Shown piece after piece: positions 5,734-14,103 of a stretch of 16,110 bases of DNA (within the stretch, counting starts at the first letter, position 1; each line of letters starts with the position of its first letter). Where the stretch lies: the NCBI RefSeq assembly GCF_000143415.4, contig NW_003314524.1, forward strand, positions 1 through 16,110, given 5' to 3'. Under the pieces are notes generated by a model. It was given only the letters and a program-made list of their open reading frames with translations. It had not been told where the DNA came from and ran no database searches. The stretch comes from Selaginella moellendorffii (taxonomy: Eukaryota; Plantae; Lycopodiophyta). The position numbers and the translations under genes were made by a program.

Positions 5734-6333
5734 ATGGCAAGCTCTAATGCGCTCCTAGCTGCTCTTGTTGCTTTAAGTCTTTGTTTTGCAGCAATCCCAC
5801 TCGCAGCAGCCACTTCCTTCAACGTTGTCAATCGCTGCGGGGGCTCGCTTAATATCATCGTCCGCGAGAACGCCGGAGGCCCCTCGATTGGAACCTCCGG
5901 ATTCACTCTCTCCCCCGGCGCATCTCGCCGACTAAGTCCTCCGAATCGCTGGGCGGGAAACATCGGCACTGGAACTCCCGGCCTCCTGGCCGAGTTCTCG
6001 ATCAACAGCAACAGGAACCTTGATTTCTACGACATCAGCGCCGTGGATGGCTTCTTCATCGGCACTGGGATGAGCATCACTGGATCTGGCAGGGGTCTGA
6101 CTTGCCGAGCGGATGCTGGAACTTGTCCTCCCCAGAACAGGAATGGGAATACTTGCGCCAGTCCCAACAGGAACGATCCAAACTCGCAGTACGCGCGGAA
6201 CGTCCGTGCCTCATGCCCGGATGCTTATAGCTGGTCTGGTGACGACACCAAGACTTTTGCTACTGGAACCGGAGGAACTTTCAGCATTACGTTCTGCCCG
6301 TCATCAATCAATCTCTTTGCAGCAAATAAATGA
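5734..6333 (+). CDS. Secreted thaumatin-like (PR-5 family) protein, short form, intronless, 199 aa
   Basis: Hydrophobic signal peptide, then TSFNVVNRC, GFTLSPG, LAEFS, DFYDISAVDGF, CPDAYSW..DD and FSITFCP, all hallmark thaumatin-family motifs. Confidence 0.92.
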   Translation: MASSNALLAALVALSLCFAAIPLAAATSFNVVNRCGGSLNIIVRENAGGPSIGTSGFTLSPGASRRLSPPNRWAGNIGTGTPGLLAEFSINSNRNLDFYDISAVDGFFIGTGMSITGSGRGLTCRADAGTCPPQNRNGNTCASPNRNDPNSQYARNVRASCPDAYSWSGDDTKTFATGTGGTFSITFCPSSINLFAANK

Positions 6334-6920
6334 ATTCCGGTCTTCTACTTGAGTTGTCTATAGTTATTATATCCATGGCCACCTCCACAACGCGTCCACG
6401 TCGCACGGGGCAAGAATGTACCGCGCGTCATCCACGCGTCCCGCGCGGCCAAGTCCACCATGCACCGAGAATACGGGGTTTGTTTAATTATATGGTATGA
6501 TATTTTATTGTAAGAACCCGGTTGCTGAGATGATGGCTATGCCGAAGGGTCCACTCAACAAGGATTAACAATTTGCTCTTTACCCCTTGTTCTGGTCACA
6601 AGCTCAGAAAAACAGCTTAGACTAGTCATTTAGGACATCGGTCTCCCAAAAAAACGTCAAACCTTGCCAATAGTAATTTAAAATAGAATAAAGTAAACAA
6701 TATTCTTAGCTCTAAGTTTACGAAGTCCAAACACAAAATAAATTCGGGAAGGAAATGCCGGGTCGCTCACACCATTGAAGATGGTAGCGTTGGACGCGCT
6801 CGGTTTTCTCATTATCATTCTCGATAGAGTCACTTTAAGTTGGATATCTGAGATACGGTGCACAAGCTTGATTCTGTGCGATCATCATAAAACCTGCACA
6901 GAAAAATAAAACACAGCGTC

Positions 6921-7025
6921 GGCACACTCCCTTCGCAGGAATTATCCTGATCAGGTCGTGAGGGTCTCATCTCAGCCTACCCTTTCAGAAGAAAGACTCT
7001 TTTCAGGGCAAGCACCCCTGGTGCC
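6921..7025 (-). ncRNA. TPP (thiamine pyrophosphate) riboswitch aptamer in the THI1 3' UTR
   Basis: Minus strand reads GGCACCAGGGGTGCTTGCCCT...AGGGTAGGCTGAGATGAGACCCTCACGACCTGATCAGGATAATTCCTGCGAAGGGAGTGTGCC. It shows P1 (GGCAC/GTGCC), a P3 stem, the CUGAGA motif, the ACCUGA..AGGAUAAUUCCUGCG.AGGGA P4/P5 element, and lies 176 nt after the stop codon of a thiamine-biosynthesis gene on the same strand. Confidence 0.96.
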
Positions 7026-7200
7026 AGATTTCATCAGTTTCAAGAGCTTAAGCTTGCAAACCAAATTACCAAACAAGTAGTAGCAAACAGAAAAATACTT
7101 ACTGAAAAAACAGAAAGTAGCAGCCTTATCCCATGGAGAACCACACGCTCGGAAGATGATTCACTCCACTCGTAAAACCAGAGATTTTTCGAGTGAGTGA

Positions 7201-8527
<1,327 letters not shown>

Positions 8528-8638
8528 CTACGATTGATCCTGGTCTCTACAAAGATTTGTCAATGTTAAACTTCGAGCGAGCATAAGTTGGAGCTCCTGT
8601 CTCGAGACAAATCAAATCACAGACAAAGATCGGGAATT

Positions 8639-9694
8639 TTAGTAGATTGTGCTGGCGAGAGACTTGACCTCTTTGGAGACGTCCGTGTAATCCTCCATGA
8701 AGCCTTGCTTTTCTTCGTCCTCCAGCTTGCCTTTGACAGGATTTAACAGCACCAGCATGCAGCAAGCCGGACGCTTCTGAGCGGCGGCGCCTCCCAAATC
8801 CTGAAAAGATAGAAAAGGAATGAGTACAAAGGTAAAAAAGGATGAGAAACAAAAACGATGCCTCTTTTGAAGGAACGTAGATGTAAGGAATGTCCGACTC
8901 TTCGCAGAGTATTGGCAAGTGTGTGATTACATCGATTGGTGAGATATCTCCTGCGATTACACAGAGCCTGCAAAGTAGAAAGCAGAAAGATGGATCTGGC
9001 ACTGTAAGATTGCAAACTGGAAGCTCTTACCCCTTCTGTCCCCGGCGAACAGCTTTTACGACCTCCTTTACTCCCCTCCTGAGTTGCTTGTTCTGAGCCG
9101 CTGCAAAAACAAAGACCGCAAATCTTGTCACATAAGAGAGTAATACTTGTAAGAAAAGATAACCTCAGACAGCGAATAGCAGCAGCAAGGCGAGAAAAAT
9201 CCCACCTTTCAGCCGGTAATTCCAGAAAAATTAAGTCATCATAGGCCTAAAGACCAAGAGCAGGAAAAAAAACTTAAGAACGAAACACAGGGCCTCAGCC
9301 AGCCTAAAGTCGCAGCACCAAGGCGAAGCAAAACTTCGTCTTTCAGCCGGTAATTCCAGAAAAACGAAACATCATCGGCCAAAAGAACAAAAAAAGAGAG
9401 AGAGAAAAAAAAAGTGGAGAAATAAAGCAGAAAAGCCTCAGCAGCCAAATCGCAGCATCAAGGCGAAGAGATCCTCGCCTTTAAGCCGGTAATTCCAGAA
9501 TCAAAACGATCCAAACATCATCGGCTATTGCACGCATTCATTCTTCCTTCTAGATCCATACCTCTCCGGACGAGCTTGAGCGTCTTCTTACAAAGGCGCT
9601 TGCCCGCTAGTGGCCTGGCGATGATCGACACATGCTGCCGCTTCTTGCGATCCTTTTCCTTGTCTTTCTTGTTGCCCTCGCCGTCACTCACCAT
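8639..9694 (-). CDS. NHP2: H/ACA snoRNP subunit NHP2 (L7Ae family), 4 exons (9694-9562, 9100-9031, 8967-8862, 8800-8639), 156 aa
   Basis: Spliced product contains [77 protein letters not shown] and KRPACCMLV. Exon phases are consistent (133+70+106+162 nt). Confidence 0.93.
9161..9247 (-). ncRNA. Box C/D snoRNA copy C (snR77/SNORD65-like), in NHP2 intron 1
   Basis: Terminal stem GGCC/GGTT, canonical C box ATGATGA, guide CTGGAATTACCG plus D' CTGA, internal hairpin AAGGTGGGA/TCTCGCCTT, D box CTGA; ends about 60 nt before the 3' splice site. Confidence 0.88.
9291..9380 (-). ncRNA. Box C/D snoRNA copy B (snR77/SNORD65-like), in NHP2 intron 1
   Basis: Terminal stem GGCC/GGCC, C box ATGATGT, guide CTGGAATTACCG followed by G and D' CTGA, internal hairpin CGAAG/CTTCG, D box CTGA. 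Confidence 0.86.
9434..9526 (-). ncRNA. Box C/D snoRNA copy A (snR77/SNORD65-like, 18S rRNA 2'-O-methyl-U guide), in NHP2 intron 1
   Basis: Terminal stem AGCC/GGCT, C box ATGATGT, guide CTGGAATTACCG, degenerate D' CTTA, internal hairpin AAGGCGAGGA/TCTTCGCCTT, C'-like TGATGC, D box CTGA. Confidence 0.82.
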
Positions 9695-13804: not shown

Positions 13805-13960
13805 ACGACGAGCAAGAGATTTCAAACTTTATGGTTGTCTCCAGCACGGCCTAGACAAACTTCTCGATCTTTTGGCGGTTCTCGAAGATCCAACCTTTAC
13901 GCCAGCGTAACGTCAAGCGATGTAAAACAAATTGTAATTTGAATAGCTCAGAGATTCAAT

Positions 13961-14033
13961 CGCCGCCCGAGGGGCTCGAACCCTCGGCCACAAGGTTAAG
14001 AGCCTTGCGCTCTGCCGACTGAGCTAGGGCGGC
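13961..14033 (-). tRNA. tRNA-Lys(CUU), 73 nt
   Basis: Minus strand GCCGCCCTAGCTCAGTCGGCAGAGCGCAAGGCTCTTAACCTTGTGGCCGAGGGTTCGAGCCCCTCGGGCGGCG folds as a full cloverleaf: acceptor stem GCCGCCC/GGGCGGC, anticodon stem CAAGG/CCTTG with loop CTCTTAA, T loop TTCGAGC; A and B boxes intact. Confidence 0.96.
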
Positions 14034-14103
14034 ATTAGCGGGAAAGAGAGTCGTTTAATTCAAACTCGATATTTAAACACACTTTTCTGATTTAGCGGCC
14101 ATT

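What the first reader, a model, noticed from the sequence alone, without database searches (positions are those of the whole stretch)
6894..7102. TPP riboswitch on THI1 (not THIC) with a candidate splice-based expression platform
Seen: a complete TPP aptamer at 7025-6921 in the THI1 3' UTR; a strong donor GTAAGT at 7102 and a weaker GTAATT at 7069; a CAG acceptor inside the aptamer (GCACCAG, 7018) preceded by a branch-like CTGAT; and a second strong acceptor TTTATTTTTCTGTGCAG at 6894 just past the aptamer. Established: flowering plants carry this riboswitch in the THIC 3' UTR, where it controls alternative splicing and mRNA stability; THI1-linked copies are reported for early-diverging land plants. 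Inference: TPP may choose between intron retention, an 85-nt intron that cuts the aptamer, and a 209-nt intron that removes it whole. The last option would differ from the THIC model.
Basis: partly seen in the sequence, partly recalled or inferred. Interest (0 to 1): 0.8.

Follow-up and report, generated by a model that had tools for sequence, protein, structure and literature searches.

The report
Thiamine riboswitch in spikemoss THI1 tail
This is a genuine thiamine-pyrophosphate riboswitch in the 3' untranslated region of the spikemoss (Selaginella moellendorffii) thiazole synthase gene THI1; an 85-base intron there is spliced in some transcripts and ends inside the sensor. The kind is already published and closely resembles the well-studied THIC riboswitch of flowering plants.

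Summary
Rfam finds a full TPP aptamer at 6910-7029 (-), 58.8 bits against a threshold of 54.3. It starts about 170 nt after the stop codon of a Thi4/THI1 gene of Selaginella moellendorffii.

RNA-derived contigs from four studies show the 85-nt 3'UTR intron (donor 7102, acceptor 7018) both spliced and retained. The proposed 209-nt intron to 6894 and the donor at 7069 were not seen.

The 85-nt intron does not depart from the THIC model. [quoted passage not shown]

THI1-linked TPP riboswitches in non-seed plants are published, so the kind is known.

I add three things:
- A branch-point-like CURAY motif before the aptamer and the CCAG|G acceptor are kept in all 8 THI1 loci compared, covering liverwort, moss, lycophyte and fern.
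- The second acceptor-like site just past the aptamer is kept in 19 of 22 plant loci, THIC as well as THI1. It is therefore not THI1-specific, and its use is unproven.
- Related moss transcripts include one spliced to a third acceptor inside the aptamer and one polyadenylated, fully unspliced form.

TPP dependence and the masking mechanism remain inferred.

The parts
7421..8326 (-). THI1 (thiamine thiazole synthase) CDS exon 1, 302 codons
   Evidence: Pfam Thi4 369 bits; 100% identical to SELMODRAFT_163429; covered by RNA contigs
7366..7420 (-). CDS intron, 55 nt, GT..AG
   Evidence: Joint 7364/7420 (cut +1) in all four runs at full CDS depth
7201..7365 (-). THI1 CDS exon 2 with stop codon 7203-7201
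   Evidence: Reading frame continues GAPRM|GPTFGAMM as in all homologues
7103..7200 (-). First 98 nt of the 3'UTR, up to the 3'UTR donor
   Evidence: RNA contigs 7102-8318 and 6988-7131
7018..7102 (-). Alternatively spliced 85-nt 3'UTR intron: donor GTAAGT 7102-7097, acceptor CCAG 7021-7018. It removes the 5' strand of P1 and the first two bases of P2.
   Evidence: Joint 7016/7102 (cut +1), skipping 85 nt with CT..AC ends on the + strand, in X1, X2, X3 and X6; unspliced contig 6988-7131 in the same runs
7033..7037 (-). Branch-point-like CTGAT, 16 nt before the acceptor AG
   Evidence: A CTAAT/CTAAC/CTGAT motif at the same place in all 8 THI1 loci of alignment A1; inferred function
6910..7029 (-). 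TPP riboswitch aptamer (P1 7025-7021/6925-6921; long P3 with a 26-nt insertion)
   Evidence: RF00059 58.8 bits, E 1.5e-09; orthologues score 68-74 bits; RNAalifold recovers P1-P5 with 3 compensatory pairs in P3
6894..6916 (-). T-rich, AG-free tract ending in TGCAG|G: second acceptor-like site just past the aptamer
   Evidence: Conserved in 19 of 22 plant loci against 1 of 98 bacterial aptamers with the same core (alignment A1). No joint to it in four runs.
6707..6893 (-). Rest of the 3'UTR; RNA contigs stop at about 6707-6717, the probable poly(A) region
   Evidence: Contigs 6707-6787, 6717-6802, 6777-7017; the end itself is not shown by contigs

Best explanation
This is the THI1-linked TPP riboswitch of a lycophyte. 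The aptamer lies in the 3'UTR of the thiazole synthase mRNA.

An 85-nt intron starts 98 nt after the stop codon and ends at the CCAG|G that forms the junction of helices P1 and P2. The pre-mRNA is therefore either left unspliced, with the aptamer whole, or spliced, with P1 destroyed. Both forms are shown here.

The following steps are inferred from the homologous THIC riboswitch, which uses the same acceptor. Low TPP leaves the aptamer partly unfolded, and part of it occupies the donor region. Bound TPP folds the aptamer and frees the donor, so the intron is removed. The spliced mRNA is then expressed less, which gives negative feedback on thiazole synthesis.

One possible cause of the lower expression is nonsense-mediated decay (NMD), because the exon junction lies 98 nt past the stop codon.

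Unlike the textbook THIC case, I found no sign that the productive form ends at a poly(A) site inside the intron. The unspliced THI1 mRNA runs through the aptamer and ends about 200 nt beyond it.
For: - Aptamer above the Rfam threshold, with orthologous aptamers at 68-74 bits behind THI1 in Sphagnum, two Adiantum species, Riccia and other mosses.
- P1-P5 recovered, with compensatory changes in P3 and invariant ligand-contact stretches.
- THI1 identity.
- Spliced and unspliced 3'UTR forms in four RNA data sets. Unitig depths are crude, but the spliced share is roughly 45-61%.
- Same acceptor as THIC-III, which lacks 7 nt at the aptamer 5' end (PMC5853225).
- THIC mechanism as published (PMC10226581; PMC4841613; PMC3597705).
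- THI1 riboswitch reported in non-seed plants (PMC11521341; PMC10226581).
- Conserved branch-point-like motif and CCAG|G in all 8 THI1 loci.
- A Sphagnum-type mRNA is also spliced from a donor just after the stop into the aptamer.
- A moss THI1 mRNA with the whole aptamer carries a poly(A) tail about 530 nt downstream of it.
Against: - No data here relate isoform ratio to thiamine or TPP.
- The masking helix is not established. The best 5' splice-site/aptamer duplex in Selaginella (20 consecutive pairs with 7 G-U, -15.6 kcal/mol) is only marginal against shuffles (p about 0.04) and is not significant in the mosses.
- Forcing the aptamer fold does not change predicted donor accessibility in a consistent way.
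- The same duplex test also fails on THIC control loci, so these negatives carry little weight.
- The spliced form is about as abundant as the unspliced one, which does not suggest efficient decay.
- No canonical AAUAAA lies in the 85-nt intron, so the poly(A)-removal step of the THIC model may not apply.
Confidence: 0.6

Rival explanations
1. Acceptor-choice switch. One branch point just upstream of P1 serves two acceptors. With the aptamer unfolded, the first AG (7018) is used. With TPP bound, P1/P2 bury that AG and the compact aptamer brings the AG at 6894 within reach, so the whole aptamer is removed as a 209-nt intron.
For: - The first AG after P1 is a YAG|G behind a T-rich, AG-free tract in 19 of 22 plant loci, against 1 of 98 bacterial aptamers with the same core.
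- A branch-point-like CURAY motif lies 16-20 nt before P1/CCAG in all 8 THI1 loci.
- In Selaginella, predicted accessibility of the 6894 site rises from 0.11 to 0.47 when the aptamer fold is forced.
- A Sphagnum-type mRNA shows that acceptor use around the aptamer is flexible.
Against: - No 7103|6893 joint in contigs of four RNA runs in which the 85-nt joint is plain.
- In THIC, which carries the same downstream motif, the published TPP-induced product uses the inner acceptor.
- The accessibility effect is absent in three of five species.
- An unstable product could still have been missed.
Confidence: 0.12
2. Opposite polarity. TPP binding stabilises P1/P2, hides the acceptor at 7018 and so favours intron retention. 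The retained form, not the spliced one, would then be the poorly expressed product.
For: The acceptor AG lies inside P2 next to P1. Its predicted accessibility falls when the aptamer is forced in four of five species. Both isoforms are abundant.
Against: In the homologous THIC switch with the same acceptor, TPP raises the spliced form. A fully unspliced, polyadenylated moss THI1 mRNA looks like a normal mature message.
Confidence: 0.13
3. The aptamer no longer regulates. The 85-nt intron would be an ordinary, inefficiently spliced 3'UTR intron, and the riboswitch a conserved but silent relic, as reported for predicted diatom riboswitches.
For: No ligand-response data are available here. One paper reports predicted eukaryotic TPP riboswitches that do not respond to thiamine (PMC9544697, title and abstract).
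Against: Ligand-contact stretches are invariant, P3 changes are compensatory and the splice signals are kept from liverworts to ferns. That argues for continued selection on both the fold and the splicing context.
Confidence: 0.1

Closest known systems
THI1-linked TPP riboswitch of non-seed land plants (Bocobza et al. 2007, as cited in PMC10226581 and PMC5853225; Genome Biol Evol 2024, PMC11521341)
   Same: Same host gene, same 3'UTR location and same plant-type aptamer, in a lycophyte, one of the groups reported to keep it. Orthologous copies were found here in Sphagnum, Riccia, Adiantum and other mosses.
   Different: Nothing in kind. The papers I could read give no splice map for the Selaginella THI1 3'UTR. 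The 85-nt intron, its retention and the conserved flanking signals are details added here. Bocobza 2007 itself was not available to read.
Plant THIC 3'UTR TPP riboswitch (Wachter et al. 2007; Bocobza et al. 2007; summarised in PMC10226581, PMC4841613, PMC5853225)
   Same: Aptamer in the 3'UTR. A donor lies upstream in the 3'UTR and the acceptor a few bases inside the aptamer, so the spliced form lacks its 5' end. Retained and spliced forms coexist. The T-rich tract plus CAG|G after the aptamer is also present in the THIC loci found here.
   Different: - The host gene is THI1.
- The intron is only 85 nt and has no AAUAAA, whereas the grass-like THIC loci L111 and L074 carry AATAAA in the intron.
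- THI1 transcripts run through the aptamer to a downstream end, so a short-3'UTR product was not evident.
- Pairing of P4-P5 with the donor could not be shown.
Fungal NMT1 and NCU01977 TPP riboswitches (Cheah 2007; Li and Breaker 2013, PMC3597705)
   Same: Aptamer placed among alternative splice sites. Ligand-dependent folding decides which sites are available.
   Different: In fungi the aptamer lies within a 5' intron and the outcome is upstream ORFs or a broken ORF. Here it lies in the 3'UTR and the coding sequence is untouched.

Membership tests
TPP riboswitch aptamer (Rfam RF00059) | Covariance-model score at or above the curated gathering score over the full model | tested here: met
   58.8 bits against 54.3, model 1-105, E 1.5e-09
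TPP riboswitch aptamer (Rfam RF00059) | Helices P1-P5 supported by comparison of related sequences | tested here: met
   RNAalifold on 8 THI1 loci recovers P1, P2, P3, P4 and P5. Three P3 pairs have changes on both sides, and P1 has one-sided changes.
TPP riboswitch aptamer (Rfam RF00059) | Conserved ligand-contact stretches (CUGAGA; ACCUGAUCAGG..UAAU..CCUGCGAAGGGA) | tested here: met
   Present in the window and invariant in alignment A1
TPP riboswitch aptamer (Rfam RF00059) | Binds TPP | not testable with these tools
   Needs in-line probing or ITC on RNA 7029-6910
THI1-linked riboswitch of non-seed plants | Aptamer in the 3'UTR of a Thi4/THI1 gene of a non-seed land plant | tested here: met
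   Thi4 domain; Selaginella moellendorffii protein; aptamer starts 172 nt after the stop and lies inside RNA contigs
THIC-type splicing expression platform | Alternatively used donor in the 3'UTR upstream of the aptamer | tested here: met
   Donor at 7102 seen both spliced and unspliced in four runs
THIC-type splicing expression platform | Acceptor a few bases inside the aptamer (THIC-III lacks 7 nt of its 5' end) | tested here: met
   Acceptor at 7018 removes 7025-7018, that is P1 5' strand plus CAG; THIC description in PMC5853225
THIC-type splicing expression platform | Donor region pairs with P4-P5 of the unliganded aptamer | tested here: inconclusive
   The best duplex involves P2/P3 rather than P4-P5 and is marginal. 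Ensemble modelling shows no consistent effect. The method also fails on THIC controls.
THIC-type splicing expression platform | Main poly(A)/processing site inside the regulated intron, giving a short stable 3'UTR when retained | tested here: inconclusive
   No AAUAAA in 7102-7018. The unspliced contig runs on through the aptamer. A moss THI1 mRNA is polyadenylated far downstream. Contigs cannot show RNA ends.
THIC-type splicing expression platform | Spliced fraction rises with TPP and expression falls | not testable with these tools
   Needs plants with and without thiamine
THIC-type splicing expression platform | Host gene is THIC | tested here: not met
   The host is THI1. I therefore treat it as working like the THIC switch, not as a member of it.

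The most novel reading that the evidence does not exclude
All land-plant TPP riboswitches, on THI1 and on THIC, may keep two acceptors around the aptamer that are served by one branch point just upstream of P1. Ligand-driven folding of the aptamer would then select between cutting the aptamer (inner AG) and removing it whole (outer AG). On this reading the outer product has been missed because it is rare or unstable.
Probability: 0.12. Interest if true: 0.6.

Novelty: already known. Interest (0 to 1): 0.3.

Why it matters
This locus is a clean, RNA-supported example of the second plant TPP riboswitch, the one on THI1 that seed plants lost. It shows that the THI1 switch uses the same acceptor inside the aptamer as THIC, so both branches of thiamine synthesis were once controlled in the same way.

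The comparative result is the only part that could lead further. A branch-point-like motif, an inner acceptor and an outer acceptor-like site are kept from liverworts to ferns, and the outer site also in THIC. This gives a concrete and cheap test: RT-PCR across the aptamer, with and without thiamine and with decay blocked. The test would show whether the outer site is used.

Tried and rejected
- **Donor at 7069 (GTAATT).** No joint in four runs.
- **209-nt intron.** No joint in four runs. I keep it only as a low-probability rival.
- **Duplex search between the donor window and the aptamer.**
  - Selaginella gives 20 consecutive pairs: intron +1 to +12 with 7019-8, and exon -8 to -1 with 7005-6998. 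This is only about 1.8 SD below mononucleotide shuffles.
  - In all five THI1 loci with a GTAAGTA donor, the intron start lands on the GUGCUUGC of P2/P3. Ferns have a different P3 and different candidate donors without matching changes.
  - The same test finds nothing better than shuffles in three THIC control loci, where pairing is published. The method therefore lacks power.
- **Scan of the upstream UTR against P4-P5.** The best partners are not at the donor.
- **MFE fold of 7160-6880.** Does not even form P1/P2, so it is uninformative.
- **Partition-function accessibility with and without a forced aptamer.** No consistent change at the donor.
- **Unitig depths.** They hint that the CDS is deeper than the sum of the two 3'UTR paths in three of four runs. 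Depth per contig is too crude to claim a short isoform.
- **Primary papers.** Bocobza 2007, Wachter 2007 and Sudarsan 2003 are not held in the library. I therefore could not check whether the outer acceptor or the THI1 splice pattern is already described there.
- **Other THI1 loci.** The Ceratodon THI1 copy (L003) and transcripts L005, L006 and L129-L136 carry no aptamer.

Full report
**What is in the sequence**

On the minus strand, the window carries a two-exon gene: 8326-7421 and 7365-7201, with the stop at 7203-7201. Exon 1 scores 369 bits on Pfam Thi4. Its product is 100% identical to Selaginella moellendorffii SELMODRAFT_163429, a thiamine thiazole synthase, and the source contig is 16110 bases long, the same length as the window.

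A scan of the window against all of Rfam gives two matches. One is a tRNA. The other is the TPP riboswitch aptamer at 6910-7029 (-), covering the full model at 58.8 bits against a gathering score of 54.3, E 1.5e-09. The modest score comes from a 26-nt insertion in the variable P3 arm.

**RNA evidence**

I laid Logan contigs of four runs from four studies on 6300-8700. The 55-nt CDS intron is spliced out in all four and no contig retains it, so these are RNA-derived assemblies.

All four runs show a joint that skips 85 nt, 7102-7018, with GT..AG on the minus strand. All four also have a contig, 6988-7131, that runs unspliced across the donor and into the aptamer. By unitig depth the two forms are of similar abundance, roughly 45-61% spliced, but this measure is crude.

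Contigs continue through the aptamer to about 6707-6717. No joint from 7103 to 6893 and none from 7069 was reported. Contigs drop rare variants, so this shows only that such forms are not common.

**Comparison with the THIC model**

The published THIC switch works as follows. At low TPP, the P4-P5 part of the aptamer pairs with a donor in the 3'UTR. The intron, which holds the main processing site, is retained, and a short stable mRNA results. At high TPP the donor is free, the intron is removed, and long unstable 3'UTRs follow (PMC10226581; PMC4841613; PMC3597705).

[quoted passage not shown] That is the same CCAG|G used here at 7018.

THI1-linked TPP riboswitches in non-seed plants are also published (PMC11521341; PMC10226581; PMC5853225, all citing Bocobza 2007).

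**Related loci**

I fetched THI1 loci of other non-seed plants. I also scanned metagenome contigs for the aptamer core.

- TPP aptamers of 68-74 bits follow THI1 in Sphagnum (L001, L011, L026, L061), Riccia (L004), two Adiantum species (L002, L007) and other mosses (L055, L124, L137).
- One Ceratodon copy (L003) has none.
- The alignment of eight THI1 loci (A1) and RNAalifold recover P1-P5. Three pairs in P3 have changes on both sides, and the ligand-contact stretches are invariant.

Three flanking features are conserved:
1. A CTAAT/CTAAC/CTGAT motif lies 16-20 nt before the inner acceptor in all eight loci.
2. The CCAG|GGGTGC acceptor is invariant.
3. The first AG after P1 is a YAG|G at the end of a T-rich, AG-free tract.

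The third feature holds in 19 of 22 plant loci. These include THIC loci of a moss, a dicot-like and grass-like sources, which I identified by their upstream THIC coding sequence. It holds in only 1 of 98 bacterial aptamers that share the same core. The 22 loci represent about 12-13 independent lineages or paralogues.

The outer acceptor-like site at 6894 is therefore real and ancient, but it is a general trait of plant TPP riboswitches, not of THI1. Two unchecked first-reader notes from this scan say the same of the THIC locus of this genome.

**Transcripts of relatives**

- L128 is a Sphagnum-type mRNA. Compared with genomic L061, it is spliced from a GTAAGT donor 13 nt after the stop to a third acceptor, GCAG|GCTGAGA, at the 3' end of P3. 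This is a 277-nt intron. It also has a second 3'UTR intron of 176 nt further on. Selaginella has TAG|G at the homologous place (6979-6977), with no joint seen.
- L137 is a moss THI1 mRNA with a poly(A) tail. It is wholly unspliced in the 3'UTR and carries the complete aptamer, with the tail about 530 nt past it.

Together with the Selaginella contigs, this indicates that the long, aptamer-bearing THI1 message is a mature mRNA. A THIC-like short form ending inside the intron was not evident. The 85-nt intron has no AAUAAA, whereas the grass-like THIC loci L111 and L074 carry AATAAA in theirs.

**Mechanism**

Shown here: the aptamer, the host gene, the two isoforms and the conservation.

Inferred: that TPP controls the choice, and in which direction. 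By homology with THIC, I take TPP to promote removal of the 85-nt intron and so lower expression. One possible route (from general knowledge) is nonsense-mediated decay, because the junction lies 98 nt past the stop. The high level of the spliced form argues against strong decay.

My attempts to find the masking helix were inconclusive. The same test fails on THIC controls, so it cannot decide either way.

Rivals, with my confidence in each:
- Choice between the two acceptors: 0.12.
- Opposite polarity: 0.13.
- A silent relic: 0.10.

**Verdict**

The kind, and almost certainly this instance, is already known. The added value is the RNA-backed splice map and the conserved pair of acceptors with a shared branch-point-like motif. 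The function of the outer site is open and easy to test.

Noticed in passing
window 6761-6806: Contigs in X1, X2 and X6 share about 45 nt here and then continue with similar but diverged sequence on both sides (loose ends of 255 nt). This suggests a second expressed copy or allele of this 3'UTR. A scan note (s1-344412) describes an orphan TPP riboswitch copy elsewhere in this genome, which might be the source.
   Followed up: partly
window 6861-6890: In X2, X3 and X6, but not in the shallow X1, the assembly graph breaks between contigs 6861-7017 and 6777-6890. This implies an alternative continuation at 6860 or 6891. It does not fit a junction at 6893. The cause is unknown: an allele indel, an RNA end, or another splice.
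   Followed up: partly
window 5734-6333 (+): Convergent thaumatin-family gene (Pfam PF00314, 63 bits). In run X3 a contig runs from it to 6787, overlapping the 3' end of the THI1 transcript on the other strand.
   Followed up: no
window 13960-14034 (-): tRNA-Lys (CUU), 68 bits in Rfam and called by ARAGORN.
   Followed up: yes
window 6977-6979 (-): TAG|G at the 3' end of P3. This is homologous to the GCAG|G acceptor actually used in the Sphagnum-type mRNA L128. No joint to it was seen in Selaginella.
   Followed up: partly
L128:1283-1415 versus L061 (genomic): The Sphagnum-type THI1 mRNA is spliced into the aptamer at the P3/J3-2 boundary (277-nt intron) and has a further 176-nt 3'UTR intron. 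Its remaining aptamer part carries two base changes relative to L061.
   Followed up: yes
L137:1337-2233: Polyadenylated moss THI1 mRNA with a fully unspliced 897-nt 3'UTR that holds the GTAAGT donor, the whole aptamer and the outer acceptor-like site.
   Followed up: yes
L003:5297-5455: A U1 snRNA gene (124 bits) lies about 1.3 kb downstream of a Ceratodon purpureus THI1 copy that has no riboswitch.
   Followed up: no
L111:2300-2420 and L074:1340-1445: Grass-like THIC loci carry AATAAA signals inside the riboswitch-controlled intron, as the THIC model requires. Their donor reads G|GTAAGCAGG, which resembles a complement of the CCUGC of P5 and of the start of P3.
   Followed up: partly
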